From contig CDROCS010001028.1 of assembly GCA_977020255.1 (NCBI GenBank), positions 1 to 64,000 on the forward strand: DNA of 64,000 nucleotides, in the 5' to 3' direction. This document shows positions 44,061-62,161 of the stretch, in pieces. Every line of letters begins with the position of its first letter. The first letter of the stretch is position 1. Both the position numbers and the translations under genes were made by a program. The notes under the pieces are model-generated. The model was not told the origin of the DNA, ran no database searches, and worked only from the letters and a program-made list of their open reading frames with translations. Source of the stretch: Obrimoposthia wandeli (Eukaryota).

Positions 44061-44069
44061 AAATTCGCC

Positions 44070-47456: not shown

Positions 47457-47772
47457 TTGAATAATTATGAGAAATAAAGAACAAATCACCTTTAAGGAGG
47501 AGGTATCATCACAGAACAAAACCGTCTAAAAAAACGATCTCATCAACTTAAAAATGAAATCAGTAATAAAAAAGCGTTAAGTTGGAATGAACTTTGCTTT
47601 ATCTCTCGCTCTATCTATATTTCAGGTACTAAGCTCTATATAGCATAGTGTTAATGTGAGATATGGCGAGTTCGGTATTAAGAAATGGGTACCGCACCTA
47701 AAATGCTGCACCCTTAAAATACGAAAACATATAATCTGTTTACAAACATTGATGAACCAGCAGGATTTTCTG

Positions 47773-48666: not shown

Positions 48667-49580
48667 TGACCACCCGCTTTCCAGAATTTATGAATGCTAA
48701 ACAAGTCGCTGAATATTTAGATCTGAATGAAAAGAAAGTCTACTCTTTGGCAAACGATGCATTGTTACCGGCAACGAAAGTAACGGGTAAATGGCTATTC
48801 CCTAAATCAATGCTCGATAAATGGTTATTAGAATCTTGCCATAACGGAGTGTTAAACGATCGCTTATTAATTGCGGGATCGGATGACCCTCTCTTACAGA
48901 TGGTAGTGGGGAAAATGGCGAACCAATTAGGCAGTACCGCCTTAGTCGGCTATACCTCAACAGGTACTCGACAAGGGTTAGCCATGTTAAGTAAAGGCCA
49001 TGTAGATATATGCGCGATTCATTGGGGCCATGCGGAAGAAGCGGCTTTACGTCACCCTGCTCTATTACAACAATATCCGGGTCATAAAAACTGGGTGCTC
49101 ATCCATGCTTTCGAACGCCAACAAGGGTTAGTCGTTAGTCATGAAATCGCAGAAGCGGTTAACTCACGTTCATTAAACCCACAAGAATTACTCGCCTCAC
49201 GTTGGCGTTGGGCGTTACGTCAAGAAGGTGCCGGTAGTATGCGCGCCTTAGAAGAATGGTTACATGGCCATGCCTTTAATATCAGTATGCTAACAAAAGC
49301 GGATACATGTAACAGTGAACGTGAACTGGCTTCTTACATTGCACGCGGACTTGCAGACGTGGGCTGTGCAAGCCAGAGTACAGCAGGTGAATTCGGCTTA
49401 GGTTTTATACCTTTATGTAAAGAAGCATTTGAATTAGTAATACCTAAAAACATTTACTTTCGCACCTTACAGCAACAGCTAATGCAATCCTTATCTAACA
49501 TGGAAATACAAGCCAAGGGTGATCAACTGGGCGGTTATAACTTTGCACGCAGCGGTAAACAAGTATGGAGTGCTAACTAG
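48666..49580 (+). CDS. HTH_17 plus PBP-like (molybdate/tungstate-binding type) transcriptional regulator
   Basis: N-terminal MNAKQVAEYL...GKWLFP; GSDDP, RQEGAGS. Confidence 0.8.
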   Translation: MTTRFPEFMNAKQVAEYLDLNEKKVYSLANDALLPATKVTGKWLFPKSMLDKWLLESCHNGVLNDRLLIAGSDDPLLQMVVGKMANQLGSTALVGYTSTGTRQGLAMLSKGHVDICAIHWGHAEEAALRHPALLQQYPGHKNWVLIHAFERQQGLVVSHEIAEAVNSRSLNPQELLASRWRWALRQEGAGSMRALEEWLHGHAFNISMLTKADTCNSERELASYIARGLADVGCASQSTAGEFGLGFIPLCKEAFELVIPKNIYFRTLQQQLMQSLSNMEIQAKGDQLGGYNFARSGKQVWSAN

Positions 49581-49972: not shown

Positions 49973-50001
49973 TTGAGAATTTACGCCACAAGTAGCATAA
50001 T
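49973..50001 (+). promoter_or_regulatory. Sigma70 promoter of the fatty acyl-CoA reductase operon
   Basis: TTGAGA-17 bp-CATAAT. Confidence 0.6.
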
Positions 50002-50006
50002 AAGAA

Positions 50007-50023
50007 TTCTCATCCGACCAGTC
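50007..50023. promoter_or_regulatory. FadR-like operator overlapping the predicted transcription start
   Basis: - strand GACTGGTCGGATGAGAA, compared with FadR consensus AACTGGTCnGACCAGTT. Confidence 0.65.
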
Positions 50024-50078
50024 TGGCTACTGTGAAGGATGACTTTATTTATAAAAAAAAACGCGTAAAGGAGTGGTC

Positions 50079-52067
50079 ATGAATTATTTCATCACCGGCG
50101 CAACAGGATTCATCGGATCCCATTTATTGCAACGTCTGGCAAAACGTCCTGGAGTATTCTACGTATTGGCGCGTAGCGAATCTTCTGAGAAGAAACTTCA
50201 AGATTTAATTGAAAAGCATGCTTTTCCTCAAGATAAGTTCCGTACCGTAAGAGGCTCAATTACAGAATCAAATCTGGGGCTTTCTACAGAGAACATCAAA
50301 CACCTAACAGGTAAGATAACGCACTTTTTCCATCTTGCAGCAGTCTACGATTTAGAAGCAGATGAGAATGATTTAATGCGTGCCAATGTTGAAGGTACAG
50401 ACAACGCCCTTCGACTTGCTGAACGTATTCAAGCAGGCTGTTTCCATCATGTCAGTTCAATTGCCGTAGCAGGTCTATTCCGTGGCTGGTTTAGAGAAGA
50501 TATGCTAGAGCAAGCAACAGATCTAGAACACCCTTACTTCAAAACCAAACATGAAGCTGAAAAGCTGGTTCAAGAAACAGCAACCATCCCTTGGCGAGCA
50601 TACCGACCGGGTATCGTTATCGGTGATTCAAAAACCGGTGAAGCTGAACGTGTCGATGGTCCTTATTACTTCTTTAAGATTTTGCAAAAGCTACGTCGTT
50701 CATTACCAGAATGGATGCCACTGCTGGGCCTTGAAGGTGGGCGTTTAAATTTAGTGCCTGTCGATTATGTTGTTGATAGCATCGATCACATTTCACACAA
50801 AGATGAATTAGACGGACAAGCTTTCCATATTGTCGATCCCGACCCTTACCGCGCAGGAGAGGTTATCAATATCTTTGCTGAAGCCGGTCACGCGCCACGT
50901 ATGGCAATGCGTTTAGATATGCGTTTATTCCGCATGATACCGACACATTTATGGAAAGAGTTAAGCCAATTACCAGTACTTCGCCGTTTCATGGATGCGT
51001 TAAGCCAAGAGATGCAAGTACCGAAAGAAGCGTTATGTTTGTTTAATTACCCGACCCAATTCGATTGCCACAACACATTAAAAGCCTTAGAAGACAGCAC
51101 AATCAATTGCCCTCGCCTAACCGATTATGCGCCAAAGATTTGGGATTATTGGGAACGTAACCTTGATCCATCACTTCATGTCGATCGTACATTAAAAGGC
51201 TGTGTTGAAAACAAAGTAATTGTACTAACCGGTGCCTCTTCAGGTATTGGTTACACCACTGCACTGAAACTGGCCGACACCAACGCCACGTTAGTCTTGA
51301 TTGCCCGTGATTTAGAACGCCTACAGCAAACTCGAAATGATGTTGAAAGCCGAGGTGGACGCGCATTCATTTACCAAGCCGATCTCAGTAAAGAAGAAGA
51401 AAGTAACAAGGTGATGGATGAAATTAAACGCCATCACGGCAACATTGATGTTTTGATCAACAACGCAGGCCGTTCAATTCGCCGCTCTGTTATGCACTCA
51501 ACAGACCGCTTACACGATTATGAACGCACCATGCAAATTAACTACTTTGGCGCGCTACGTTTAATTCTAGGTAGCCTACCTGGCATGGTAGAGCAGCAAT
51601 CAGGGCATATCATCAACTTGTCTTCCGTTGCTGTATTAACTAACCAACCTCGCTTTTCTGCTTATGCCGCCTCTAAATCAGCGTTAGATTCATTTACACG
51701 TACAGCAAGTGCTGAATTATGTGGACAAGGGGTTAACTTCACGACCATCAATATGCCGTTAGTAGAAACCCCAATGATCGCCGATCATTACCGTAAAGCA
51801 AAAGGTGGCATTCCACTGCTATCGTCAGATGAAGCCGCCGATTTAATCATCAAAGCAATTATTGAAAAGCCGAAACGTATTGCAAACCGCATCGGTCTTT
51901 TTGCCGCGTTAGTTCACGGCGTTTATCCTAAATTAGGTGAACTGGTAATGAATACTGGTTTTAACATGGAACCCGAAACGGATGGAAAAAAACACGGCAG
52001 CGATCCTAAACAAGATAGTGCTGACGTAATGGCGTTATCCAATCTCATCCGCGAAATACATATGTAA
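50079..52067 (+). CDS. Two-domain SDR fatty acyl-CoA reductase (Marinobacter acrB/Maqu_2507-like architecture)
   Basis: N-domain TGATGFIG, YFKTK, YRPGIV; C-domain TGASSGIG, NNAGRSIRR, YAASK. Confidence 0.85.
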   Translation: MNYFITGATGFIGSHLLQRLAKRPGVFYVLARSESSEKKLQDLIEKHAFPQDKFRTVRGSITESNLGLSTENIKHLTGKITHFFHLAAVYDLEADENDLMRANVEGTDNALRLAERIQAGCFHHVSSIAVAGLFRGWFREDMLEQATDLEHPYFKTKHEAEKLVQETATIPWRAYRPGIVIGDSKTGEAERVDGPYYFFKILQKLRRSLPEWMPLLGLEGGRLNLVPVDYVVDSIDHISHKDELDGQAFHIVDPDPYRAGEVINIFAEAGHAPRMAMRLDMRLFRMIPTHLWKELSQLPVLRRFMDALSQEMQVPKEALCLFNYPTQFDCHNTLKALEDSTINCPRLTDYAPKIWDYWERNLDPSLHVDRTLKGCVENKVIVLTGASSGIGYTTALKLADTNATLVLIARDLERLQQTRNDVESRGGRAFIYQADLSKEEESNKVMDEIKRHHGNIDVLINNAGRSIRRSVMHSTDRLHDYERTMQINYFGALRLILGSLPGMVEQQSGHIINLSSVAVLTNQPRFSAYAASKSALDSFTRTASAELCGQGVNFTTINMPLVETPMIADHYRKAKGGIPLLSSDEAADLIIKAIIEKPKRIANRIGLFAALVHGVYPKLGELVMNTGFNMEPETDGKKHGSDPKQDSADVMALSNLIREIHM

Positions 52068-52076
52068 GGACACATT

Positions 52077-52595
52077 ATGCAAGTCTCAGCGATTCATGAT
52101 TACCAAGAAGATCTCGATACTATTTTACGTTTCTTCAGCGAAGAAGAACTGATTATCGAAAAGTATCAAAAACTCGGTGCGCGCAATATACGTATCATCA
52201 AAATTGAAGAAACAGAAGATGGCTTCCTTGTGGAAACACAACGAGAAGTACCAGCGAATGTGCCAGGAATGCTAAAAAGCCTGCTAGGTAGTTACAACAC
52301 AATAAAGCAATCTGAAACTTGGCACTGGTTAGAAGGTGATCAACTAAAGTGTGAGATGCAAGTTGAGCTTATCGGTGTGCCTGCGGCGATTACCGGTCAA
52401 ATGCTATTTAGTGAGCCAGCAGCAAAGCTAAAGAGTGGGCCTACAACGCGTAATAATGTGGAGATGACCATTAGTTCATCTGTGCCATTCATTGGTAGCA
52501 CATTGGTCTCGTTCATTTGTGACGATATAAAGCAGCAAATGCAAACGGAATATGCGTTTTTACTTGAAGCGCTTCCTGCGTTATTAACTGAGTAA
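52077..52595 (+). CDS. DUF2505-like (START/SRPBCC-type) protein
   Basis: KYQKLGARN, beta-rich ETW...GVP...G pattern; co-transcribed with the reductase. Confidence 0.65.
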   Translation: MQVSAIHDYQEDLDTILRFFSEEELIIEKYQKLGARNIRIIKIEETEDGFLVETQREVPANVPGMLKSLLGSYNTIKQSETWHWLEGDQLKCEMQVELIGVPAAITGQMLFSEPAAKLKSGPTTRNNVEMTISSSVPFIGSTLVSFICDDIKQQMQTEYAFLLEALPALLTE

Positions 52596-52647
52596 TACGC
52601 AGGCTTACAACACGACTATACAAATAGCGTTGTGTTTATAACCCTAT

Positions 52648-52679
52648 CGTTGTTGCCAATACACCCTTTGGTAACAACG
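52648..52679. promoter_or_regulatory. 12-bp inverted repeat upstream of the TetR gene (candidate operator or hairpin)
   Basis: cgttgttgccaa-8 nt-ttggtaacaacg. Confidence 0.45.
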
Positions 52680-52720
52680 AAATTCTAACAACAATAAAAA
52701 ACGTCAGACAAGGAAGAAAA

Positions 52721-53353
52721 ATGAAGACTCGAGATCGGATTCTATCAGTCAGTCTTGACCTTTTTAATCGTAATGGTATCTCGCAAGTAAGTACCTTGAT
52801 TATTGCTACTGAAATGGGGATTAGCCCTGGTAACTTGTATTACCATTTTCGCGGTAAAGACGAAATCATTACGACCTTGATCAGTGAGTTGCAAAATTCT
52901 GTTTCAAGAATCAGTATGGAGTATCCCAAACAAGTTCAAGATTTTGATGATTACTGGCCGTTCATGCATACCGTGATGGCACTGTTTACCCATTATCGAT
53001 TCATGTTTAGAAACTTAGATAACTTGAACGGGCAAAACCCACAGATAAAACGTAAAATTCGCACGTTAATTTTAAAATTACGGCAACTCAGTAGCGATAT
53101 GCTTGCGCATTTAGTTAGCTTAGGAAAGCTGCAATGCGATAATAACAGCCTACCGCTATTATCAGACAATTTACTATTAGTCAGCTTGAATTGGTTAAAC
53201 TACCAAACACTATTAGATGATAAATACAGTGAAACGGAACTCATTCGTGCCGGCGTGTTACGTTTAATTTCAATGGTAGAACCATACCTAACTGAATCTG
53301 CAAAATCACCTTTCTATACGCATCAAGATTTATTAGACGAACTGGTTAACTAA
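52721..53353 (+). CDS. TetR-family regulator, PhaD-like
   Basis: MKTRDRIL...EMGISPGNLYYHF.GK...DYW.F.H...YRF.F matches the recalled Pseudomonas PhaD pattern. Confidence 0.8.
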   Translation: MKTRDRILSVSLDLFNRNGISQVSTLIIATEMGISPGNLYYHFRGKDEIITTLISELQNSVSRISMEYPKQVQDFDDYWPFMHTVMALFTHYRFMFRNLDNLNGQNPQIKRKIRTLILKLRQLSSDMLAHLVSLGKLQCDNNSLPLLSDNLLLVSLNWLNYQTLLDDKYSETELIRAGVLRLISMVEPYLTESAKSPFYTHQDLLDELVN

Positions 53354-53861
53354 TTTCTTCAGCGCCGTAACGATACGAACCATGTTACGGCGTAACCGAT
53401 TTTTATTTATCCGCCTTTATATCATCATCATTACTTCGTTAATATTTTGACTTAATAAACGCCTTCTTTTTGACGAAGCAACCTTGATATAAATAAATCT
53501 AACAAAACAATGAGACACCCATTTCATATTAAATCATTCGAAATATGACCGAGTTATCATAAACAATGATAAATGTATAATTTATATGGTTAAAATTAAT
53601 AAATATAATGACTTTGTAGAAGAATAATTATTAAATATCTACCCTAAGTATATAAAGATATTCAAAGTAGTCGTCTGGTACAGTTCTTACACGTAATGGA
53701 TAACCGTGTACGAACCTTTTCAACTCGAGACAATCGATAGTTATATGATAAACCGGAATATAAAAGGCACTGAATTCACTACTTATCGAAAATTACAGAC
53801 TAAACATTACTAACTTAAAGAAAATTAATACTATTCTCATATTTCTAAGGTTCGTTATATT

Positions 53862-54827
53862 ATGTTAAAAAAAGCCATTATTCTTATATCAGTGGGTGTT
53901 TCGTTTTGTACTCAAGCGACCCCATTGCTAACAAAAACCGAGCAAGAACAAGTCAGCTCTGTAAGAGAACAGTTTAATGATACTGCTGAATTACAAAAAT
54001 TAACGAAAGTTAATAGCAGTATATTTACGTTAACCAACCAGACTAGTCAGTTAAAAGCTTCGATTGTTAACGAAAGAAAAGCCTACCAAGAGTTCCAACA
54101 AAAACTAAGCAAAGAGATGCTCTCTGGCACAGAAGAAAATACAAATTACTACTTTGAGTCAATGAAAAAGACATCAAATAAGATTAAAACAAACAATGAT
54201 ACAATTCACAAAAATACGGCACTTGTCACTCAATACAACGCGGAACTTGAGAAGCTAAACCACTCTATTCGCCAATCAAAAAACACGTATAGCGATAAGC
54301 TTACCACCATCAAAAATAGCGTTGTTACCCGTATAAAAACAGAATTTTCAAAGCCTCTTCCTATTAAAATAGAAGGCAAGCTTCAATGCTCCCCTTATGA
54401 ATCTATTCGCGCCTGTTTTGAAAGCAAACAAACGACAAGTAAGCTTGTGAATGATGCTATTGAATCTCGCTTTGGTCAGATTGACATTACAAGCAGTACC
54501 AATCAATTTACGGTCAATTCAGCCAGTATGGACTTTGAAGGGAATGTTGATTACAACGTCAGCTTTAACTTGTTTGTTCAATATAATGAACAAATCAATG
54601 CTCAAATCATGAAAGAAGTCGGCATTAACTCATTTGATATCATGCTTGTAAGCAATAAAAATGCAATGTTCTACATTGATGGGTTACCAGTAGGAAACGG
54701 CAATAATGTCTCGGTAAAAGTATCAAAGGGTAAATACTCGATACTGGCTAAATTTGATGATAAACAAGAATCATCAATTCAAAGTATCACTAGCCCAGTT
54801 AGCTTAACGTATAACTTTTCAAGCTAA
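53862..54827 (+). CDS. Secreted coiled-coil protein with C-terminal PEGA-like domain
   Basis: Signal peptide, long coiled coil, FYIDGLPVG...VSKGKY. Confidence 0.6.
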   Translation: MLKKAIILISVGVSFCTQATPLLTKTEQEQVSSVREQFNDTAELQKLTKVNSSIFTLTNQTSQLKASIVNERKAYQEFQQKLSKEMLSGTEENTNYYFESMKKTSNKIKTNNDTIHKNTALVTQYNAELEKLNHSIRQSKNTYSDKLTTIKNSVVTRIKTEFSKPLPIKIEGKLQCSPYESIRACFESKQTTSKLVNDAIESRFGQIDITSSTNQFTVNSASMDFEGNVDYNVSFNLFVQYNEQINAQIMKEVGINSFDIMLVSNKNAMFYIDGLPVGNGNNVSVKVSKGKYSILAKFDDKQESSIQSITSPVSLTYNFSS

Positions 54828-54937
54828 GTTAACATGCCGTGAATATCATTCTTTGATTGAATAACAAAGACTGACGTCACTCGCAGCACCAGCCAGCTCA
54901 ATGAGCTGGCTTTTTAATAAACGATGCCTGTTAACGA

Positions 54938-55294
54938 TTACAACGCAGACAATACCCCTTTATTGGCACGTGTTAATTTACTCACAACCAAATTATAAGA
55001 TTTATCAGCTAAGTCTTGCAGCACACTTTCCGATAGCTCACCCGTTAAAGCAATTGTTATCCAATGCTGCTTGTTCATGTGATAGCCAGGTATGATAGAG
55101 GCAAACTCATGAACTAAAAAATCACCATCGGCAGGAAGGCACTTTAGCGTGATACTGGGTATGTCATTGTGGATGGCAGTTAATGCAAACATTTTTCCCA
55201 TCACTTTAAATACGTATGCTTCAGGGCCGAAAGGGTAACCACCTTGCACCCCTTTAAAACTAAGCAGGTATTTTTCCAATTGTTCCGTTTTCAT
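54938..55294 (-). CDS. MmcQ/YjbR family protein
   Basis: YPFG...FKVMGKMFA, PGYHMNKQHW. Confidence 0.92.
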   Translation of the reverse strand: MKTEQLEKYLLSFKGVQGGYPFGPEAYVFKVMGKMFALTAIHNDIPSITLKCLPADGDFLVHEFASIIPGYHMNKQHWITIALTGELSESVLQDLADKSYNLVVSKLTRANKGVLSAL

Positions 55295-55527
55295 ATGACC
55301 TCCTCACCAACACTCATCCGTTATATTTTCTCACCATAATCCACACACTGCATATTGATTCATCTAATTGCATTGTGTTTCATTAAAACCTACGTCTGAC
55401 CGCTTAATTATCCAGCATATTTCCATTTTTTTACATAAACTTGACTTGCACGTATTGGGTATTAAAAGGAACAATACACTCTTTCCTTTTTTATCTATTT
55501 CGACTATTTCATCCTCAAGGAGCGATT

Positions 55528-56424
55528 GTGGGCAGAGCATTATTTTTCATTTTTTCCCTGGTAAGCGTAAGTATCGCCACTTCTGCACATGCCACGGCTG
55601 CCAAATTAGATCCCAACAACATTCAAACAGCATCAGTCAGTGCTTACGTTACCGATTTGAAATCTGGCAAAACCTTATATAAAAAGAACCAGAACGTGAT
55701 AATGCCATTAGCTTCTATTACTAAGATTATGACAGCAATGGTTACACTCGATGCAAAACTACCTTTAAATGAAAAAATTACCTTCAAGCCGATTGATAAA
55801 AAACGGATGTATAACGGTTACACACGTATTCGCATGGAATCACGATTAAGCCGTGGCGAAACGATACATATTGCTCTTATGTCATCTGAAAACTTGGCTG
55901 CGACAGCACTGGCAGGCAACTACCCTGGTGGCTACGACGCCTTTATTAACGCCATGAATGCGAAAGCCAAAGCTTTAGGTATGACCAATACAACATTTGT
56001 GGATAGTTCAGGTCTCGATCCTAAAAACGTATCGACAGCTTCAGACATTAATAAGATGGCAAAAGCCGCGTATAAATACGCAAAAATCCGTGAATACAGT
56101 ACAACGCCCGTTCACACCGTTTACTTTACTAAACCAAAATACAAATTGGGTTACACCAATACGAATGTTTTGGCTCGTGGTAAAAAGTGGGATGTAGGAA
56201 TGACCAAGACAGGTTATTTAGACATTGCGGGTCACTGCTTAACGATGATCACCAAGATTGATGGTAAAGAAATTCTAATGGTTATGCTTGATGCGCAAGG
56301 CAAACTAACCCCTATTGGCGATGCTGGCCGTATTAAAAAGTGGCTACAAACCGGTAATAGCGGCAAAATCTCTGATTCTGCCAAAAACTACCAACAAGTA
56401 AAACTAACTGATTTGAAAGGCTAA
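55528..56424 (+). CDS. pbpG: D-alanyl-D-alanine endopeptidase (PBP7)
   Basis: ASITK, SEN, KTG; GTG start with RBS. Confidence 0.88.
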   Translation: MGRALFFIFSLVSVSIATSAHATAAKLDPNNIQTASVSAYVTDLKSGKTLYKKNQNVIMPLASITKIMTAMVTLDAKLPLNEKITFKPIDKKRMYNGYTRIRMESRLSRGETIHIALMSSENLAATALAGNYPGGYDAFINAMNAKAKALGMTNTTFVDSSGLDPKNVSTASDINKMAKAAYKYAKIREYSTTPVHTVYFTKPKYKLGYTNTNVLARGKKWDVGMTKTGYLDIAGHCLTMITKIDGKEILMVMLDAQGKLTPIGDAGRIKKWLQTGNSGKISDSAKNYQQVKLTDLKG

Positions 56425-56465
56425 TTCTGTTTTTTCATCGTTACAGAAACGTATTATAGTTACAA

Positions 56466-56511
56466 AAACGGGTCGTTAAATCGGTTTATAATCCGACTTA
56501 ACGACCCGTTT
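56466..56511. terminator. Long bidirectional hairpin between convergent genes
   Basis: aaacgggtcgttaa...ttaacgacccgttt. Confidence 0.7.
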
Positions 56512-56548
56512 GCTATTCAACATGATTTTTACTCACCAAACAAACGTA

Positions 56549-57298
56549 TTACCCACGTTTGTAATTCAAAACCTTCTCTATATCTAATGCATCTGAGTAT
56601 TGGCAAAAATCATGCTGCTCTTGATCGGCGCCATATACCGACATGCGGTCAGCAAGTTCATTGCCTTCAACACCAATGTGTGCTTTTACGTGTGACACCA
56701 CTACGCGATTTTTGATTGTGTCGTAAAGAGCATGAGCCTGCTGAATCAATTCAAGGTTTTTGATATCCCCTGCAACTTTTCGCTTCCAGCCTTTTGTTTT
56801 CCAGCTATATGCCCACACCGTTAAACAATTAATCGCGTACTGGGAATCTGCTAATACTTGAACGCGAAGACCTTTCTCAATTTCCTGCTTGGCAATGAGC
56901 AACGATTGATGCAGTGCATTTAGCTCTGCCGTGTTGTTTGTGCCCATTGGGTTATATAAACCATACCAAAGCTCAGCTAACGCACCATCGCGATACACAG
57001 CGACACCAGAGCCTGATTTACCCGGGTTAGGATCGCACGCGCCATCACAATAGATATTAACTTCGAAATTAGCCGTTTTAGGCGCAAGAGATTCAGACGG
57101 CTTAGACGCTGTCTTTTTAACTGAAGATCTTGGAGTGCTTACACGACCCGATGCAAATGCGGCTTCAGCTTCTTGCTCTGTAGGAAATGATTTATAGCGT
57201 GCTTGCGGAAATTTATCGACGAGCTTTTTCGTATATGGCCAACTAGTGAAAACACCTGTTTCTCGACCAGCCCAAACAACGTAAAATTTCTTCGCCAT
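56549..57298 (-). CDS. Ribonuclease HI with N-terminal hybrid-binding (viroplasmin-like) domain
   Basis: KKFYVVWAGR.TGVF..W, YCDGAC, TNNTAEL, DSQY, GNELAD. Confidence 0.92.
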   Translation of the reverse strand: MAKKFYVVWAGRETGVFTSWPYTKKLVDKFPQARYKSFPTEQEAEAAFASGRVSTPRSSVKKTASKPSESLAPKTANFEVNIYCDGACDPNPGKSGSGVAVYRDGALAELWYGLYNPMGTNNTAELNALHQSLLIAKQEIEKGLRVQVLADSQYAINCLTVWAYSWKTKGWKRKVAGDIKNLELIQQAHALYDTIKNRVVVSHVKAHIGVEGNELADRMSVYGADQEQHDFCQYSDALDIEKVLNYKRG

Positions 57299-57442
57299 AC
57301 TTTTTCCTATATTGTCTTATTGCCACACTTCTTAGGCGACAATTTATATAGATGTATAGTTACTTAATTCTACGTAATTCACAATGTTAACAAATGCTAT
57401 CTGGCTCTTTCTAGTCTCAACTGCTTAGGATTGACTCAAAAT

Positions 57443-57862
57443 CTACACACCTAGCAATGGTAAATGTTTAATTTGATGATAACGTAACGACAGTGAAATG
57501 CAGTGTGCTAACTCTCGGGTTGCAATGTCATCATCAACGGTAAAAACAATGCCTTTATCATCATCAAAACGGAAAGTATCGTCATAGAGTTCTTTGAATG
57601 TATCGATCAATTTGGTTTTACATTGAAAATACATTGCATATTGATTGGGCGTTTGTGATTTCCAATCAATACGGATAGGGCTACCACCATCGACAACAAA
57701 ACTGGGTTCGTTAGCATTTAATGTCTCTTGAACTTGCTCTGGCAAATCGATTTTCTTTGATACATCAATCACTAATTGACGAAGAGACAATAACTTGTCA
57801 CGAATACCTTCAGGGTAGGATTGATATTTTTCATCAACCATCAACACGTTTGCATTATTCAT
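57443..57862 (-). CDS. DUF1801-like protein
   Basis: LRQLVI, FQCKTKLIDTF, ALRYH-like SLRYH. Confidence 0.7.
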   Translation of the reverse strand: MNNANVLMVDEKYQSYPEGIRDKLLSLRQLVIDVSKKIDLPEQVQETLNANEPSFVVDGGSPIRIDWKSQTPNQYAMYFQCKTKLIDTFKELYDDTFRFDDDKGIVFTVDDDIATRELAHCISLSLRYHQIKHLPLLGV

Positions 57863-58213
57863 TTGATTACCTTTCTTAATTCTTTCGTGCCCTTTGGGCT
57901 AGCTATAGCATTAATCTACATCTAAATGACGCTAAAACTGCACAGACCAGAATACTTATCTTATAGTTATTTCGTGACAGTATGGTGTTGATCACATCTT
58001 TATCAGGGCAAGATCACGTATTTATTACTTTTTAATAAAGTAATAATAAACCAATACCTAGAGCAAATAACTGCTTGCCTTTTTTGAGCCACAAAAGTGA
58101 TGTTGTGATGCGTATCAATACGAAAGACAATCAATACCACGCGGATTAATGCCAAAGAGATAAGATTTTAGAAAGGTAGCCTTCGGTTAAAAAGGCGTTC
58201 AAAAAGAAAGGTG

Positions 58214-59149
58214 TTAGCTGGCTTTTTTGGTTAATGGCTTAGCTTCTTTATATTTTTCTGTAATAAATTCTGACATAAGCTTAATGGCTTCACGCGCTTC
58301 AGTTAGCTGATAAAACAATGGGTACACATGAGGTACGCCTTTAACGATATTGATCGTTACATCTCCCCCTGCTTCACTCATCTTATTCGCGGTACGTACC
58401 GCATCGTCCATTAGGACTTCTTCTGTACCAGCGGTGATAAAAGTCGGTGGCAATCCATGTAAATCGGCATAAAAAGGTGATACATCAGGATCACAGGGGT
58501 TCTGCAATCCGATGTAGTTATTTCTCATCAATAATAAGCTGCTTAAATCGAAAAAAGGATCATCTTTACTTTTTGTAAAAGCAGACTCCCCTGTTACAGC
58601 CATATCTGTAACCGGTGACATAAGCACGAGGGCCGCAGGCATCGGCAGCTTTGCTTCACGTAAGCGGATGGCCGTTGTTAGTGCCAGATTTCCACCAGCA
58701 GAATCGCCGCCGATTATAATTTGATGCGGTAAATACCCTTGTTGCAATAACGCATTATAGACCGCGTAACATTCATCAGCTGCTATCGGGTATGGGGCTT
58801 CGGGTGCCAAGCTGTAATTAACCATTAAACCACGTGATTTGGTTGCATTGGATAATCTGGCTAAGAAAGCATTATGGGTGTTGGGACTATGGAAACAAAA
58901 GCCACCACCATGAAAATACAAAATGATTTTATTACCACTGCTTTTAGGCATATCGACCCAATCACAGCTGATACCTGCAAATTTGGTGGGGGCAACTTCC
59001 ATTTTTTTCGGAATACTAATGAGTGCGCCGTAGCTATCAATATTCTTAATAAGTTCACGCATTTCTAATGTGGAATGACAACTAGCAAGGCGCTGGCGCA
59101 TAACGCGTGATAAAATTTTATTGAATGCTCTGGTACGCCAACTATACAT
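58214..59149 (-). CDS. HSL-family alpha/beta hydrolase (esterase/lipase)
   Basis: HGGG, GDSAGG, EVLMDD, HVY. Confidence 0.92.
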   Translation of the reverse strand: MYSWRTRAFNKILSRVMRQRLASCHSTLEMRELIKNIDSYGALISIPKKMEVAPTKFAGISCDWVDMPKSSGNKIILYFHGGGFCFHSPNTHNAFLARLSNATKSRGLMVNYSLAPEAPYPIAADECYAVYNALLQQGYLPHQIIIGGDSAGGNLALTTAIRLREAKLPMPAALVLMSPVTDMAVTGESAFTKSKDDPFFDLSSLLLMRNNYIGLQNPCDPDVSPFYADLHGLPPTFITAGTEEVLMDDAVRTANKMSEAGGDVTINIVKGVPHVYPLFYQLTEAREAIKLMSEFITEKYKEAKPLTKKAS

Positions 59150-59376
59150 AACTACCACCCTTATATTTTACATTCTTTATTTGTACTTTAGGTCATGAAT
59201 CTTATAAATAAAAGTTCACGATAACCTATCGGCTTAATGCACGGCAGTAAACGTTAAGTGACATACGTCGTAATAATATAGATTATTACTGTCCTTTTGC
59301 CCTGTCCTAATACATAGAATTGTCACAAACAGTTCGCCCTGTTTACGTAACACTTACGTTATAAAAAATCACAAAC

Positions 59377-59411
59377 AAAAAGAGGTGCACGTGCATGGCA
59401 CACGTGCAACC
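59377..59411 (-). terminator. Terminator downstream of the phasin genes
   Basis: ggtgcacgtg...cacgtgcaacc with T-run on the - strand. Confidence 0.55.
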
Positions 59412-59534
59412 TTAAAAAGCATATAACTAACGTTGTTAGAAAAATCTCTTATAACTCAGTCTGTATATGCTATCAGGGTTACATTATTGTCTGGCTTGGC
59501 TGGCTTATAGCCCGTAACCCTGTGTAAATTGCAC

Positions 59535-59894
59535 TTATTCTACTTCTACTAGCTTTTCTACTGCTGATGTTAGCTTGTCGATTTTGTCGTCCATACGATC
59601 TAGCTTTTCACGATCAACACCACTTAAGCGATAGAATAAATCATTCATACCCGCTTCAACTTCGTCAGTCGCTTTTTCTGCATTTTGACCAATGCATTCT
59701 TTCGCTTGAACTTCAACTTCTTTGCCGCGTTCAACGAGTTCATCAAACGCAGTATTCGTTTTATCATTAATTTGTTGAGCTTCTTCAAGTGTGCGGCTAT
59801 ATAGACCTAAACCTGCAAGCCAAATATTGCGTGCAACACCTTCGCCACTTTCTACGACATTTTTCGCCGCTTTTGCTACTGTTTTATCAATCAT
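59535..59894 (-). CDS. Phasin (PhaI/PhaF family)
   Basis: NIWLAGLGLY, FDELVERG, LDRMDDKIDKL. Confidence 0.88.
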   Translation of the reverse strand: MIDKTVAKAAKNVVESGEGVARNIWLAGLGLYSRTLEEAQQINDKTNTAFDELVERGKEVEVQAKECIGQNAEKATDEVEAGMNDLFYRLSGVDREKLDRMDDKIDKLTSAVEKLVEVE

Positions 59895-59997
59895 AATAAT
59901 CTCCTGCGTATAAACGCTGATCTGTATAAGATAATTTCGCTAAGTCTTCTTTTGAGCGCACCATTTCATGCATAAACTCATCGGTCTATAGCGTGTA

Positions 59998-60696
59998 TTA
60001 ATTCACTTCCGCTGACTTTGTAACAGCAGATTGATTGCCGACAGTCGTTACTGCTTCTGGTTGTTCATTCATTGACTCAGTTTTTGCCAGTTCAGTTTTT
60101 ACTACGGCAGACTTAGCGTCAGTTTTTGGTTTATCCGCAATAGAATTAGCAACAACAGCTTTAGCTATTACGGTTTCCTGCTTTACTTCAGAATTTGCCA
60201 CTACTGCTTTTTCTGAAAGTGTTTCTTTTTTTTCTTCAGCACTCACTGCTGATTTACGACGCGCTACGACTGCTTTTTTTCCACGTGTAGCGGGTGTTTT
60301 AGCTGCTTTCTTTACTGCAGGTTTACCGTCTTGTTGACGAACTAATAGTGCTTCAATATTGGCTGTTAGTTGGTCAATTTTGTCATCAACACGATCTAAA
60401 CGTTCATTATCAATACCGATGAAACCTTGCACCATTTGATGCATACGTTCTTCAATAGCGACTGATGTTTGGCTACGTGCTGTATGTACACGTTCTTTTG
60501 TATTCGATTCAACTGAACGACCACGCTCAATTAACTCATCAAAAAGGCTTTTGCCTTTGCCTGACAGTTGATTAACTTCATCGGCACTTTTCGCATAAGC
60601 ACCTAATCCTGCTAACCAAATGTTGTAGACCATGGCATCACGTACAAGCTTTTTCTCTTTGCTTGATTCATCTGCAGTCTGTTTAAAGATGCTCAT
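59998..60696 (-). CDS. Phasin with Ala/Lys-rich tail (PhaF-like)
   Basis: NIWLAGLGAYAK, FDELIERG, then KPAVKKAAKTPA low-complexity tail. Confidence 0.88.
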   Translation of the reverse strand: MSIFKQTADESSKEKKLVRDAMVYNIWLAGLGAYAKSADEVNQLSGKGKSLFDELIERGRSVESNTKERVHTARSQTSVAIEERMHQMVQGFIGIDNERLDRVDDKIDQLTANIEALLVRQQDGKPAVKKAAKTPATRGKKAVVARRKSAVSAEEKKETLSEKAVVANSEVKQETVIAKAVVANSIADKPKTDAKSAVVKTELAKTESMNEQPEAVTTVGNQSAVTKSAEVN

Positions 60697-60933
60697 TGTT
60701 GCGTCCTCCGGGATTACTGTTAATTCGACTGTCAGTCAGTGGGTATTGCCTGACTGCTTGTAACTAGAATAGGAATTTCAATTAGAATGTTCTTACTAAA
60801 ACAGCAATTTATCGTGGGCGAGATCAAAAATTTGAAGAATAAAGCAAATAGGATACAAAGAAATAACCGAACTATTTTAGTCAAATAACAGCTCGGCATT
60901 AAGAAGGAGGCAGAAGGTACAGCAGAAAGGCTG

Positions 60934-61260
60934 TTATTGCGTAATAAGTAGCTTATCAAGGCGCTTGGATATACTGTTTTCAATGCTATAAGCAAAAAAA
61001 CTGGCTGCAAAACCTAATTTCAATTGAATCGTAATTTTTCCATGCTGAGAATGAAGGAAACCACGGGCTGACATGTGATCAATAACCAAACGATCATCTT
61101 GCCAAGACCATTCAATACCGTACTTACTAGCGAGTTCATCCGCAATTTGTTCTGACATAACGACAATGTCATCAAGGTGTAGGTCATGTTCTCGTTCGAT
61201 TAAAATAGTCACTTTCTTTCCATTTTTTAGTGCAAATACTCTGTTACGTATTTTTAACAT
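60934..61260 (-). CDS. Polyhydroxyalkanoic acid system (PHA granule region) family protein
   Basis: IEREH...ELASKYG..W.W.DD.L...LKLGF...IE..I...LD. Confidence 0.8.
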   Translation of the reverse strand: MLKIRNRVFALKNGKKVTILIEREHDLHLDDIVVMSEQIADELASKYGIEWSWQDDRLVIDHMSARGFLHSQHGKITIQLKLGFAASFFAYSIENSISKRLDKLLITQ

Positions 61261-61367
61261 AACGTGATATCAAGTCAATGTCTGTGCTACAGATCGAATA
61301 GTCCAAATTTGACTTACTACAATGAAAAAGAATAGACCAAAATATTACTAAACCACAAAAAAACACA

Positions 61368-61916
61368 CTAACGGCGAAAAACTAGTCGCAATACCCTAGA
61401 AAGCACAATCGCGCCCCCAACGGTCAGACGAGCCCCCGCAATCGCCCGTCGATAAGGTCGCTTTTCTGCGGGCGCGACTATACCGCCAACGAGCAAGCCA
61501 ACCCCCGCTAATTTAATTAGCCTATTTTCAGTTCCCGTAATAAGAAGCCCTGCAAATAATAGTACAAATAACCGTTGAAATTGAGTGCACTCAACAGGCA
61601 AACCATGAGATTGACGCACAAATTGTTCGCAATTACGATTGAATAAATTATAGGGAGTACCTAAAAATTGTTGAGCCTGTAAATATGCTTTCTCTGGTTC
61701 ATCACTGGTAATTGAACTAACCCAAATGGCTCTACCTTCTGAAAACTCATATAACGTATCAAACTGTACTTGCCTACGTTTTTTTGAATTGTGTATTACC
61801 CCACCTCTCCCATCAGCCATGCCATAGTGCCAATATGATAAGCAACGAACTTTAAGAATGGTTCCTACCGGATAACGAGTTATCTCCATACCATTTCCTA
61901 TTAATAATACTATCAA
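61368..61916 (-). CDS. LRAT-family (permuted NlpC/P60) acyltransferase/phospholipase-like protein
   Basis: WHYG and YNLFNRNCEQF catalytic motifs, C-terminal hydrophobic segments. Confidence 0.85.
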   Translation of the reverse strand: MIVLLIGNGMEITRYPVGTILKVRCLSYWHYGMADGRGGVIHNSKKRRQVQFDTLYEFSEGRAIWVSSITSDEPEKAYLQAQQFLGTPYNLFNRNCEQFVRQSHGLPVECTQFQRLFVLLFAGLLITGTENRLIKLAGVGLLVGGIVAPAEKRPYRRAIAGARLTVGGAIVLSRVLRLVFRR

Positions 61917-62161
61917 ATATATAACTCAATAATAGCTGGTTTTTTCAAAGTGATAATCGAATCGCACCTCTTAATAATCAGTAATATAGCCACTCTAGTA
62001 ACAAGAATGTTGTCTCAACACCAAGATTTTAGTCATTGGTATTTACATTCATAAGCAAGTCAAATAATTCATGCTATATTTTTATCAATGACATATTTAT
62101 GTTGGTTTTAATGATAATTAAATATCATTAACAAGGTTGATTAGTCCTAGATGGTATTAAT

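What the first reader, a model, noticed from the sequence alone, without database searches (positions are those of the whole stretch)
49973..61916. Candidate neutral-lipid (wax ester) body system: PHA granule machinery with a fatty acyl-CoA reductase in place of a PHA synthase
Seen: within about 12 kb lie a two-domain fatty acyl-CoA reductase, a START-like DUF2505 protein, a PhaD-like TetR, an HSL-family esterase, two PhaF/PhaI-like phasins, a PHA-granule-region protein and an LRAT-like enzyme. No PhaC and no WS/DGAT (HHxxxDG) is recognisable in the window. Established: in Pseudomonas, phaD/phaF/phaI flank phaC1-phaZ-phaC2; two-domain reductases of this type make fatty alcohols for wax esters in Marinobacter. 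Inference: a phasin-coated wax-ester or other neutral-lipid inclusion with synthesis, transfer, coat, mobilisation and regulation functions. I know of no such system described in Vibrionaceae. The two sub-clusters are separated by unrelated genes (pbpG, RNase H), so their linkage is not proven.
Basis: partly seen in the sequence, partly recalled or inferred. Interest (0 to 1): 0.72.

Follow-up and report, generated by a model that had tools for sequence, protein, structure and literature searches.

The report
Wax-ester storage cluster missing its synthase
This deep-sea Photobacterium stretch is a rearranged copy of a gene cluster, shared by several marine and soil bacteria, that joins wax-making enzymes to "bioplastic-granule" coat and regulator proteins. 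It probably builds and manages wax droplets, but this copy has lost its own wax synthase, which lies elsewhere in the closest sequenced relative, and nothing has been tested at the bench.

Summary
**Observation:** confirmed. All eight genes are intact at the stated places, and the window holds no WS/DGAT or PhaC.

**Key result:** the two sub-clusters are one system. Vibrio, Ferrimonas, a metagenome contig and, more loosely, Corallincola carry PHA_gran_rgn, long phasin, short phasin, WS/DGAT and HSL esterase, then TetR (PF13972), DUF2505 and the two-domain reductase on the opposite strand. The window has the same order and strands. It lacks the WS/DGAT, has five unrelated genes inserted, and has an LRAT-like gene added.

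- The window reductase is sister to the Vibrio cluster reductase.
- Betaproteobacterial relatives of the reductase sit beside phasin, WS/DGAT, ACBP and a PF13972 TetR.
- P. profundum SS9 carries phasin–WS/DGAT–ACBP–second reductase elsewhere. By a published table it also has phaP–phaC1.

**Verdict:** the wax-ester-body reading is well supported by synteny. In the intact cluster the WS/DGAT, not the reductase, stands where a PHA synthase would.

**Other support:** all genes are under purifying selection. The phasin pair lies on very deep contigs in sediment RNA libraries.

**Limit:** nothing is biochemically tested.

**Earlier notes:** the scan noted related loci on other DNA before (s1-208480, s1-250338, s1-250246).

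**Novelty:** new variant of a known kind.

The parts
50079..52067 (+). Two-domain fatty acyl-CoA reductase, here called FAR1. N-terminal thioester-reductase domain (NAD_binding_4) and C-terminal classical SDR.
   Evidence: Pfam and NCBIfam PRK07201 equivalog, 914.6 bits. GATGFIG and YxxxK motifs present. N-terminal domain resembles the MxaA terminal reductase 4u7w. Sister to the Vibrio compact-cluster reductase, support 100/99. dN/dS 0.035.
52077..52595 (+). DUF2505 protein with a START-like lipid-binding fold, 9 bp after the reductase.
   Evidence: PF10698 2.6e-33. AlphaFold model pLDDT 88.9. It matches the sterol and phospholipid transfer domains Lam4, Lam2 and PRELID/Ups1, with TM up to 0.77. 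It sits next to the reductase in Vibrio, Ferrimonas, Corallincola and L040.
52721..53353 (+). TetR-family regulator with a PF13972 C-terminal domain (candidate PhaD-like regulator).
   Evidence: PF13972 3.8e-32 plus TetR_N. A PF13972 TetR sits next to DUF2505 and the reductase in all compact clusters and lies in the betaproteobacterial clusters.
53862..57862 (.). Intervening block that is not part of the system: secreted coiled-coil protein (53862-54827+), YjbR (54938-55294-), PbpG-type peptidase (55441-56424+), RNase H (56549-57298-) and a 139-aa ORF (57443-57862-).
   Evidence: Pfam. The 321-aa protein has a signal peptide. The block is absent from the compact clusters. Its content varies among Photobacterium: SS9 has two extra genes, L034 shows no RNase H or 139-aa ORF hit, and TY1-4 has only YjbR and the coiled-coil gene.
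58214..59158 (-). Hormone-sensitive-lipase family (family IV) esterase, the candidate wax-ester/acylglycerol hydrolase.
   Evidence: Abhydrolase_3 2.6e-55. NCBIfam GESAG-HSL subfamily hit at 225 bits, below its 430-bit cut-off. HGGG and GDSAG motifs. Directly follows the WS/DGAT in Vibrio, Ferrimonas, Corallincola, L040 and Variovorax.
59386..59408 (-). Intrinsic-terminator-like hairpin after the short phasin gene, in the 379-bp spacer where other genera carry the WS/DGAT.
   Evidence: 10-pair stem followed by a T run. RNA-library contigs of two studies end at 59371. No WS/DGAT remnant in the spacer.
59535..59894 (-). Short phasin-like protein (119 aa, PhaI-like in size).
   Evidence: PF05597 47.5 bits. 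53-60% identical to the short phasin immediately upstream of the WS/DGAT in Corallincola and Vibrio. dS only 0.08. Lies on very deep RNA-library contigs.
59998..60696 (-). Long phasin-like protein (232 aa) with a Lys/Ala-rich C-terminal tail (PhaF-like architecture).
   Evidence: PF05597 41.3 bits. Sequence. The Corallincola orthologue has an AKP-repeat tail. Lies on very deep RNA-library contigs.
60934..61260 (-). PHA_gran_rgn family protein; likely start is GTG 61212, giving 92 aa.
   Evidence: PF09650 2.1e-23 and TIGR02610 48.6 bits against a cut-off of 40.25. First gene of the compact clusters. Model pLDDT 85.6, with only weak fold matches to PA4090 and KA1 domains.
61368..61916 (-). LRAT/H-RAS-like-suppressor family thiol acyltransferase or phospholipase with C-terminal hydrophobic segments; likely start is ATG 61889.
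   Evidence: PF04970 32.4 bits against a cut-off of 24.3. His and NCEQF Cys conserved with the TY1-4 orthologue. Next to PHA_gran_rgn only in Photobacterium and not seen in the Vibrio, Ferrimonas or Corallincola clusters.

Best explanation
The region is a WS/DGAT-less, split derivative of a conserved proteobacterial 'wax-ester body' gene cluster.

**Ancestral form.** As kept in Vibrio and Ferrimonas, the cluster reads PHA_gran_rgn, long phasin, short phasin, WS/DGAT, HSL esterase, then divergently TetR (PF13972), DUF2505 and the two-domain acyl-CoA reductase.

**Inferred working.**
1. The reductase turns acyl-CoA into fatty alcohol.
2. A WS/DGAT esterifies the alcohol with acyl-CoA.
3. The wax collects in a droplet coated by the two abundant phasin-like proteins.
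4. The long phasin may tether droplets to the nucleoid through its Lys/Ala-rich tail, as PhaF does for PHA granules.
5. The START-like DUF2505 protein handles or presents a lipid intermediate.
6. The HSL esterase mobilises the store.
7. The TetR protein sets expression in response to an acyl-CoA-type ligand.

**In Photobacterium.** The cluster's own WS/DGAT was lost before the sampled species diverged. Unrelated genes were inserted between the esterase and the TetR gene. An LRAT-like gene sits next to PHA_gran_rgn. In P. profundum SS9 a WS/DGAT lies at a separate phasin/WS-DGAT/ACBP/reductase locus, and I infer that this enzyme supplies the esterification step.

**Shown:** gene identities, synteny, orthology of the reductase, purifying selection, and presence in RNA libraries. 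**Inferred:** every biochemical and cell-biological step.
For: **Gene identities:**

**Compact cluster with identical order and strands:** Vibrio L028, Ferrimonas L027, metagenome L040, and more loosely Corallincola L017. Window proteins are 34-60% identical to those cluster members, PHA_gran_rgn lowest at 29-47%.

**Reductase tree:** window FAR1 is sister to the Vibrio cluster reductase (100/99) and then joins Ferrimonas and L040 (90/92, below the tool's firm mark). The second Photobacterium reductase groups with Corallincola (94/93, also below that mark), next to the Betaproteobacteria.

**Betaproteobacteria:** 10 of 13 genome loci found through the reductase have a PF05597 phasin directly upstream. 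Eight of them also carry WS/DGAT, ACBP, PF13972 TetR and patatin.

**Metagenome scan with the short phasin:** of 38 loci, 13 show WS/DGAT, ACBP and/or the reductase beside the phasin (L038, L040, L054-L060, L062, L064-L066). Three longer Photobacterium-type contigs (L029, L030, L034) repeat the window layout with the reductase about 6-8 kb away. No PhaC was seen.

**WS/DGAT in the lineage:** P. profundum SS9 chromosome 1 carries phasin, WS/DGAT with HHSMADG, ACBP and reductase 2.

**Conservation:** the arrangement is kept in Photobacterium species down to about 55-89% protein identity. dN/dS is 0.03-0.31 for all members. Phasin dS is about 0.08-0.09 against 0.12-0.55 for the other genes.

**RNA libraries:** contig word depth is about 440-2600 over 59371-60735, against 0-52 on the neighbouring genes, in two runs from different studies (X5, X6).

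**DUF2505:** the model has a lipid-transfer START fold.

**Pseudomonas precedent:** PhaD is a TetR-type activator thought to bind a CoA intermediate, and PhaF has an AKP tail that binds DNA and segregates granules (PMC7590123).
Against: - No chemistry or microscopy exists. Wax esters have not been reported for Photobacterium in the papers I could search.
- The cluster here lacks its synthase, so it could be a remnant with a drifted function.
- I showed the WS/DGAT locus in P. profundum SS9, not in the very genome of the window. The window is only about 92-93% identical in DNA to SS9. The scan's 'same genome' also holds Moritella pieces.
- P. profundum has phaP-phaC1 (PMC3227634), so PHB granules may exist for these phasins to bind.
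- PF05597 and PF09650 are named for PHA granules. TIGR01837 is below its cut-off.
- Some PF05597 relatives are orphans with no lipid genes nearby (L044, L061).
- Some WS/DGAT genes have no phasin nearby (Moritella, Variovorax).
- Contig depth is a poor measure of expression, by the tool's own warning.
- No convincing shared TetR operator was found.
Confidence: 0.6

Rival explanations
1. The phasin-like proteins and PHA_gran_rgn serve PHB granules or PHB oligomers made by the distant class I PhaC of Photobacterium. Their nearness to lipid enzymes is historical and not functional.
For: PF05597 and PF09650 are PHA-granule families. P. profundum SS9 and 3TCK have collinear phaP-phaC1 (PMC3227634 Table 2). 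P. profundum is cited as accumulating hydroxybutyrate-type solutes (PMC10905720). The cluster has no synthase of its own here.
Against: - The PHB locus has its own adjacent phasin.
- Orthologues of exactly these phasins sit immediately upstream of a WS/DGAT in Vibrio, Ferrimonas, Corallincola, L038 and L040. A further homologue sits upstream of the WS/DGAT in SS9 itself.
- No PhaC was seen in any of about 50 phasin- or reductase-anchored loci. This search was incomplete: it covered only the top Pfam families plus a motif search.
Confidence: 0.15
2. After the WS/DGAT was lost, the remaining genes are functionally uncoupled. The reductase, DUF2505 and TetR genes make or sense fatty alcohols or aldehydes for another purpose, such as membrane or ether lipids or detoxification. 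The phasin-like pair has a general nucleoid or stress role.
For: - Five unrelated genes now separate the halves.
- Photobacterium sp. TY1-4 keeps the phasin half with no reductase half within 10 kb.
- Orphan PF05597 genes exist.
- The window reductase is the most divergent of the set, 49-57% identical to all others.
Against: - Both halves stay within about 7-9 kb in distinct Photobacterium species down to 83% reductase identity (L034).
- All members are under purifying selection.
- The lineage keeps a WS/DGAT that needs fatty alcohol.
Confidence: 0.15
3. The LRAT-like enzyme has taken over the esterification step in this cluster. It would use a phospholipid acyl group, through a Cys thioester, to esterify the fatty alcohol made by the reductase, as vertebrate LRAT does with retinol. 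That would make this an acyl-CoA-independent wax synthase system.
For: - The LRAT-like gene is next to PHA_gran_rgn only in Photobacterium, the lineage whose cluster lacks the WS/DGAT.
- The catalytic His and NCEQF Cys are conserved and the C-terminus has hydrophobic segments.
- dN/dS is 0.19.
- An RNA-library contig spans the LRAT/PHA_gran_rgn junction (record 12).
Against: - The correlation rests on a single lineage.
- The flanking SLT/LysM gene is equally syntenic, so LRAT may be only a neighbour.
- A WS/DGAT is available elsewhere.
- There is no solved relative by sequence and no biochemical precedent in bacteria known to me.
Confidence: 0.1

Closest known systems
Pseudomonas putida mcl-PHA cluster phaC1-phaZ-phaC2-phaD / phaI-phaF (PMC7590123)
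   Same: The logic matches: a storage-compound synthase next to its hydrolase, a TetR-family regulator, and a pair of PF05597 phasins, one long with a basic Lys/Ala-rich tail and one short. The phasins are highly expressed.
   Different: - The synthase of the intact relatives is a WS/DGAT, not a PhaC.
- The hydrolase is an HSL-family esterase, not PhaZ.
- Extra members are present: the two-domain reductase, DUF2505 and PHA_gran_rgn.
- The phasins fall below the TIGR01837 cut-off.
- Homology of the TetR protein to PhaD itself was not tested.
- In the window the synthase is absent.
Marinobacter aquaeolei VT8 wax-ester pathway (Maqu_2507-type reductase plus WS/DGAT), as cited in PMC10351704
   Same: The reductase has the same two-domain architecture. 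I take the NCBIfam PRK07201 equivalog family to be the Maqu_2507 type from recall of that enzyme's size and domains. Its product feeds a WS/DGAT.
   Different: I know of no description of a dedicated coat, regulator and hydrolase module for Marinobacter. Identity to Maqu_2507 itself could not be computed because no tool gave me its sequence.
Burkholderiales sediment scaffolds with WS/DGAT, ACBP, a Maqu_2507-like SDR, a 'PHA system family protein' and a phasin (PMC10351704)
   Same: This is the betaproteobacterial form of the cluster that I recovered independently (L004-L016).
   Different: That paper read the phasin and the PHA-system protein as PHA-metabolism genes and did not propose a wax-body coat. 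It does not mention a TetR regulator (0 occurrences) or a gammaproteobacterial or Vibrionaceae form.
Photobacterium phasin/WS-DGAT/ACBP/reductase locus (earlier scan note s1-208480; P. profundum SS9 chromosome 1, L024)
   Same: Same lineage and same protein families: a PF05597 phasin, a PRK07201-type reductase and a wax synthase.
   Different: It is a separate locus of a different cluster lineage. Its reductase groups with the ACBP-linked Corallincola reductase, next to the betaproteobacterial ones, rather than with the window's. It has the WS/DGAT but no HSL esterase, TetR, DUF2505, PHA_gran_rgn or LRAT within the 10 kb shown on each side.
Vertebrate LRAT and PLAAT (H-RAS-like suppressor) enzymes, Pfam PF04970
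   Same: A His/Cys (NCxxF) thiol acyltransferase core followed by a hydrophobic C-terminal anchor. From textbook knowledge, LRAT esterifies a long-chain alcohol for storage in lipid droplets.
   Different: The match is bacterial and short, known only at Pfam level (32.4 bits), with no PDB sequence match. Substrate and activity are unknown.

Membership tests
PRK07201 (NF005539) two-domain fatty acyl-CoA reductase, taken as Maqu_2507-type | Full-length match above the curated equivalog cut-off | tested here: met
   914.6 bits against a cut-off of 549, covering residues 3-664 of 664.
PRK07201 (NF005539) two-domain fatty acyl-CoA reductase, taken as Maqu_2507-type | N-terminal NAD_binding_4 thioester-reductase domain plus C-terminal classical SDR, with nucleotide-binding and YxxxK motifs | tested here: met
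   PF07993 at residues 7-237 and PF00106 at 381-572. GATGFIG at residue 7; YxxxK at 153 and 529.
PRK07201 (NF005539) two-domain fatty acyl-CoA reductase, taken as Maqu_2507-type | NADPH-dependent four-electron reduction of acyl-CoA to fatty alcohol | not testable with these tools
   Needs an enzyme assay.
Pseudomonas-type PhaF/PhaI phasins | PF05597 domain above the gathering score | tested here: met
   47.5 and 41.3 bits against 28.8.
Pseudomonas-type PhaF/PhaI phasins | TIGR01837 (PHA_granule_1) above its cut-off | tested here: not met
   46.1 and 32.1 bits against 94.7. The proteins do pass NF047773 'phasin-related domain'.
Pseudomonas-type PhaF/PhaI phasins | Basic AKP-type histone-like tail on the long member | tested here: inconclusive
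   The window protein has a Lys/Ala/Val-rich tail without clean AKP repeats. The Corallincola orthologue has clear AKP-type repeats.
Pseudomonas-type PhaF/PhaI phasins | Encoded next to a PHA synthase and located on PHA granules | tested here: not met
   No PhaC in the window or in the related loci examined. Localisation cannot be tested here.
PhaD-type TetR regulator | TetR_N HTH plus PF13972 C-terminal domain | tested here: met
   PF00440 2.8e-10 and PF13972 3.8e-32.
PhaD-type TetR regulator | Sequence homology to P. putida PhaD, and an operator of inverted 6-bp half-sites 8 bp apart at the cluster promoters | not tested
   No tool gave me a PhaD sequence. The operator search was inconclusive.
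WS/DGAT-based wax-ester synthesis locus | A WS/DGAT gene with HHxxxDG within the locus | tested here: not met
   No tblastn hit better than E 0.26 in the window. It is present in the orthologous clusters and in SS9 at another locus, all with HHxxxDG.
Hormone-sensitive-lipase family (bacterial family IV) esterase | HGGG oxyanion motif and GxSxG nucleophile elbow in an Abhydrolase_3 fold | tested here: met
   HGGG at residue 83 and GDSAG at 151. PF07859 2.6e-55. PDB esterases Est8 and EstD11 at about 1e-57 to 1e-61. The NCBIfam HSL subfamilies are below their cut-offs.
LRAT / NlpC-P60 H-RAS-like suppressor family | PF04970 above the gathering score, with conserved His and NCxxF Cys | tested here: met
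   32.4 bits against 24.3. His30, His42 and NCEQF at residue 95 are conserved in the TY1-4 orthologue.
START/SRPBCC lipid-binding fold (DUF2505) | Helix-grip fold with a long C-terminal helix over a curved sheet | tested here: met
   Model pLDDT 88.9. Foldseek matches to Lam4, Lam2 and PRELID, TM 0.67-0.77, E down to 1e-7.

The most novel reading that the evidence does not exclude
In Photobacterium the cluster's lost WS/DGAT has been functionally replaced by the adjacent LRAT-like thiol acyltransferase. That enzyme would esterify reductase-made fatty alcohol with a phospholipid-derived acyl group at the droplet surface. This would be a bacterial, acyl-CoA-independent wax synthase analogous to retinyl-ester formation by vertebrate LRAT.
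Probability: 0.1. Interest if true: 0.85.

Novelty: new variant of a known kind. Interest (0 to 1): 0.62.

Why it matters
To my knowledge, the proteins that coat and manage wax-ester bodies in Gram-negative bacteria are still largely undefined. In the library I searched, phasins, PhaD-type regulators and PHA_gran_rgn proteins are discussed only in connection with polyester granules.

The cluster described here joins these proteins to a wax synthase, a fatty-alcohol reductase, an esterase and a START-like protein. It is conserved across two proteobacterial classes. That suggests the 'PHA granule' tool-kit is a general neutral-lipid-body tool-kit.

It also gives named candidate genes for wax-body coat, segregation, mobilisation and regulation. 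Cultured carriers are available as test organisms: P. profundum SS9, Ferrimonas balearica, and Vibrio species whose proteins fall in the P0135 cluster (names include V. mediterranei and V. hangzhouensis).

The Photobacterium copy is a natural experiment, because the module persists under selection without its own synthase. It also bears on annotation: a 'phasin' or 'PHA system protein' label is not evidence for PHA metabolism.

Tried and rejected
- **Exact-sequence look-ups of the window reductase** with either start codon found nothing. The organism is about 92-93% identical in DNA to P. profundum, P. indicum and P. frigidiphilum, so it is not one of the indexed genomes.
- **The genome-contig scan with the reductase** returned only close Photobacterium species and about 50%-identical relatives. 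It missed Vibrio and Ferrimonas, which I reached later through the WS/DGAT.
- **The first eight-sequence phasin alignment** was too divergent for the metagenome scan. A five-sequence one worked.
- **The PHA_gran_rgn word search** gave only five hits.
- **WS/DGAT remnants in the window:** none.
- **Search for PhaC next to phasin relatives.** I had no PhaC sequence from any tool. I scanned 63 unassigned large ORFs by Pfam in bulk, where only the 25 commonest families are listed. I also used a G-x-C-x-[GA]-G motif search, which hit three GMC oxidoreductases and one unscanned 392-aa ORF in L061. This is suggestive and not exhaustive.
- **Shared TetR operator.**
  - Eleven-mer sharing among intergenic regions was noise.
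  - ATTTGACTW occurs three times, all upstream of the long phasin, PHA_gran_rgn and LRAT genes, but it looks like a -35 box and the count is as expected by chance.
  - CAGTCWGGC occurs twice, each starting exactly 60 nt before the reductase and long-phasin start codons. However, 13 of 100 shuffles give two or more matches, and the site differs by one base in P. indicum. I kept it as a lead only.
- **dN/dS against distant Photobacterium species** was saturated in dS, so I redid it against P. indicum.
- **The coiled-coil 321-aa protein** was considered as a droplet scaffold and rejected because it has a signal peptide.
- **Literature.** I found no paper on DUF2505 function. No paper links phasins to wax esters beyond a passing remark. 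The lipid-droplet preprint's 'PHA granule-associated protein' came from PHA-filled droplets.
- **The PHA_gran_rgn fold search** gave only weak matches.
- **The large representative-protein search** was not used.

Full report
**1. What is in the window**

On the plus strand:
- A 662-aa two-domain reductase at 50079-52064. It has NAD_binding_4 and adh_short domains and scores 914.6 bits on NCBIfam equivalog PRK07201, against a cut-off of 549.
- A DUF2505 protein at 52077-52592.
- A TetR regulator with the PF13972 C-terminal domain at 52721-53350.

On the minus strand:
- An HSL-family esterase at 58217-59158, with HGGG and GDSAG motifs.
- A 119-aa and a 232-aa PF05597 phasin-like protein at 59538-59894 and 60001-60696.
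- A PHA_gran_rgn protein at 60937-61260, probably starting at GTG 61212.
- An LRAT-like protein at 61371-61916, with conserved His and an NCEQF Cys and hydrophobic C-terminal segments.

Five genes lie between the two groups: a 321-aa coiled-coil protein with a signal peptide, YjbR, a PbpG-type peptidase, RNase H and a 139-aa ORF.

No WS/DGAT is detectable anywhere in the window. No PhaC family hit appears on any ORF scanned. Four large ORFs (975-3542, 36143-37186, 40266-43121 and 44070-45815) were not scanned. The window contains no N.

**2. Whose DNA it is**

The reductase is about 98% identical in protein to those of Photobacterium indicum, P. frigidiphilum and P. profundum. The whole 12-kb arrangement is collinear in them, although the fetched P. 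profundum locus ends inside the short-phasin gene. DNA identity is only about 92-93%. The window therefore comes from a separate member of the P. profundum clade.

**3. The key comparison**

I followed the PHA_gran_rgn protein and then the WS/DGAT of its Corallincola neighbour. This led to a compact cluster in Vibrio (L028), Ferrimonas balearica (L027) and a metagenome contig (L040). Corallincola platygyrae (L017) has the same set with an added ACBP and a PKD-repeat gene after PHA_gran_rgn.

The order is PHA_gran_rgn, long phasin, short phasin, WS/DGAT and HSL esterase. On the opposite strand follow TetR (PF13972), DUF2505 and the two-domain reductase.

Read on its minus strand, the window has exactly this order and these orientations. 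Its proteins are 34-60% identical to the cluster members, with PHA_gran_rgn lowest at 29-47%.

There are three differences:
1. The WS/DGAT is missing between the short phasin and the esterase. In its place is a 379-bp spacer with a terminator-like hairpin and no remnant of the gene.
2. The five unrelated genes are inserted between the esterase and the TetR gene.
3. The LRAT-like gene precedes PHA_gran_rgn.

The inserted block differs among Photobacterium species:
- SS9 has two more genes there.
- L034 shows no RNase H or 139-aa ORF hit.
- TY1-4 has only YjbR and the coiled-coil gene, and shows no reductase half within 10 kb.

The lack of a WS/DGAT at this position is shared by every Photobacterium copy seen. 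The loss is therefore old.

**4. Orthology**

A maximum-likelihood tree of 16 reductases places the window enzyme, together with that of a second Photobacterium species (L034), as sister to the Vibrio compact-cluster reductase (support 100/99). That group then joins Ferrimonas and L040 (90/92, below the tool's firm mark).

The other Photobacterium reductase, described in section 5, groups with Corallincola (94/93, also below that mark), next to the Betaproteobacteria. The window half-cluster thus descends from the compact gammaproteobacterial cluster. It is not a chance gathering of lipid genes.

**5. Where the synthase is**

WS/DGAT orthologues are annotated in about twenty Photobacterium species or strains.

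In P. profundum SS9, chromosome 1 at 2.54-2.56 Mb (L024), the order is:
- PF05597 phasin (118 aa)
- WS/DGAT (559 aa, HHSMADG motif)
- ACBP
- a second two-domain reductase (663 aa, 56.5% identical to the window's)
- a GMC oxidoreductase
- a PGAP1-like lipase

Photobacterium sp. TY1-4 and a Photobacterium metagenome scaffold have the same locus. I could not verify that it belongs to the same organism, because that 'genome' also holds Moritella pieces.

**6. A second, independent lineage**

The reductase scan also returned 13 loci with about 50% identity. Ten are betaproteobacterial. All ten have a PF05597 phasin divergently upstream of the reductase. Eight also have ACBP, a WS/DGAT, a PF13972 TetR and a patatin-like lipase. 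Many further carry a second phasin, a lipase and a desaturase-like gene, and one has a PHA_gran_rgn.

A metagenome scan seeded with the short phasin gave 38 loci:

| Type | Loci |
|---|---|
| Window-like Photobacterium, no WS/DGAT after the short phasin | L029-L036, L039 (9) |
| Gammaproteobacterial, WS/DGAT after the short phasin | L038, L040 |
| Betaproteobacterial type, with ACBP, WS/DGAT and/or the reductase | L055-L060, L062, L064-L066 (10) |
| Phasin, patatin, WS/DGAT | L054 |
| Phasin plus TetR only | L048, L049, L053 |
| Phasins plus patatin only | L051 |
| Orphan phasins beside unrelated genes (L044 and L061 scanned) | L041-L047, L050, L061, L063 |
| Too short to judge | L037, L052 |

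Among 63 unassigned large ORFs of all these loci, PhaC was not among the 25 commonest Pfam families. The PhaC-box motif hit three GMC oxidoreductases and one unscanned ORF in L061. This negative result is incomplete.

Not every WS/DGAT has phasins nearby. A Moritella WS/DGAT stands alone. Variovorax has acyl-CoA synthetase, WS/DGAT and HSL esterase without a phasin. The Variovorax case again pairs the synthase with this esterase family.

**7. Is the window copy alive?**

Against P. indicum, all members have dN/dS of 0.03-0.31. The two phasin genes have unusually low dS, 0.08-0.09 against 0.12-0.55 elsewhere. That pattern is often attributed to codon constraint in highly expressed genes.

I laid contigs of four marine-sediment RNA libraries from three studies on 56000-61950.
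- In the two larger runs (X5 and X6, from different studies), word depth is about 440-2600 over 59371-60735, which is the two phasin genes.
- Depth is 0-52 over the esterase, the 139-aa ORF, PHA_gran_rgn and LRAT.
- The deep contigs end at 59371, just past the predicted terminator at 59408-59386.

The tool warns that contig depth is a poor measure of expression and cannot rank genes. The uneven depth within one locus argues against DNA carry-over, but I treat it as suggestive only.

**8. Accessory proteins**

- **DUF2505.** The model (pLDDT 88.9) matches START-like lipid-transfer domains: Lam4, Lam2, Aster and PRELID/Ups1, with TM up to 0.77.
- **PHA_gran_rgn.** The model (pLDDT 85.6) has only weak matches to P. 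aeruginosa PA4090 and to KA1 domains. From memory, KA1 domains bind membranes. Its role stays open.
- **Reductase.** The N-terminal domain resembles the MxaA terminal thioester reductase.
- **Esterase.** The nearest solved relatives are family IV esterases.
- **LRAT-like protein.** It has no solved relative by sequence.

**9. What else the lineage stores**

A published table lists collinear phaP and phaC1 genes in P. profundum SS9 and 3TCK (PMC3227634 Table 2). A review cites hydroxybutyrate-type solutes in P. profundum (PMC10905720). The lineage thus has a PHB system with its own phasin. This weakens the rival reading but does not exclude it.

**10. How it most likely works (inference)**

By analogy with the Pseudomonas pha cluster (PMC7590123), the parts map as follows:

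| Role | Pseudomonas PHA cluster | This cluster |
|---|---|---|
| Synthase | PhaC | WS/DGAT |
| Hydrolase | PhaZ | HSL esterase |
| Regulator | PhaD | PF13972 TetR |
| Coat | PhaF and PhaI | Long and short phasin-like proteins |

The reductase supplies the fatty alcohol. The START-like protein is a plausible lipid handler.

In Photobacterium I infer that the module works with the WS/DGAT encoded at the second locus. The alternative, that the LRAT-like enzyme esterifies the alcohol, is the most novel reading. I give it about 10%.

**11. What is known**

The pathway from reductase through WS/DGAT is established, and so is the PHA tool-kit. One paper saw WS/DGAT, ACBP, a Maqu_2507-like SDR, a 'PHA system protein' and a phasin on Burkholderiales scaffolds, and read the last two as PHA genes (PMC10351704). 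I found no paper describing the gammaproteobacterial eight-gene cluster, a wax-body role for these phasins, or wax esters in Photobacterium.

The library does not cover subscription journals. This absence is therefore weak evidence.

**12. Verdict**

This is the synthase-less, interrupted Photobacterium version of a conserved and apparently undescribed wax-ester-body cluster.
- Novelty: a new variant of a known kind.
- Interest: moderate to high.
- All functional steps await experiment.

Noticed in passing
window 50019-50027 (+) and 60748-60756 (-): The 9-mer CAGTCWGGC occurs only twice in the 64-kb window. Each copy starts exactly 60 nt upstream of a start codon, of the reductase and of the long phasin, in the same orientation. 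The phasin copy lies in a palindrome, CAGTCAG-N10-CTGACTG. The expected count is 0.64, 13 of 100 shuffles give two or more, and the site differs by one base in P. indicum. It is a candidate TetR operator and is unproven.
   Followed up: partly
window 60878-60886, 61307-61315, 62057-62065: All three copies of ATTTGACTW in the window lie in the three intergenic regions upstream of the long phasin, PHA_gran_rgn and LRAT genes. The total count is as expected by chance and the motif resembles a -35 box.
   Followed up: partly
window 60313 (long phasin tail); L001 19870-20592: The Lys/Ala-rich tail of the long phasin varies in length. RNA-library contigs carry a 27-nt (9-codon) insertion after 60313. 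The P. indicum and P. frigidiphilum alignments span 241 columns against the window's 232 aa. dN/dS of 0.31 is the highest in the locus.
   Followed up: no
L024 14435-16072; L028 17501-19180; L004 780-2393; L007 590-2686; L012 815-2581: A GMC-family oxidoreductase recurs near the WS/DGAT and reductase genes in Photobacterium, Vibrio and Betaproteobacteria. It is a candidate fatty-alcohol oxidase for wax catabolism.
   Followed up: no
L025 14887-17161 (P. profundum SS9 draft contig): SS9 carries two extra genes, a GntR-aminotransferase fusion and a pyridoxamine-oxidase-like gene, between the coiled-coil gene and YjbR. The window, P. indicum and P. frigidiphilum lack them.
   Followed up: no
window 53862-54827: A 321-aa coiled-coil protein with a signal peptide and no Pfam family above threshold is conserved next to this locus in all Photobacterium species seen (59% identity in TY1-4 and L034). 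It is absent from the Vibrio and Ferrimonas clusters.
   Followed up: partly
L041-L047 (metagenome contigs, GC 0.36-0.37): A group of low-GC marine contigs carries a 242-aa PF05597 phasin-like gene. On L044, the one contig scanned, it lies between a ThrE-type exporter and a Sir2 deacetylase, with no lipid or PHA genes nearby.
   Followed up: partly
window 59324-59371: A roughly 40-46-bp indel hotspot lies just downstream of the phasin terminator. BLASTN alignments to all relatives that reach this point break at 59331/59371. One RNA-library contig skips 59324-59371.
   Followed up: no
window 40266-49577: Upstream of the reductase lies a formate-dehydrogenase-type set: a molybdopterin oxidoreductase, Fer4 proteins, DUF3305, DUF3306, FdhD and a ModE-like HTH/PBP regulator. 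It looks unrelated to the lipid genes.
   Followed up: no
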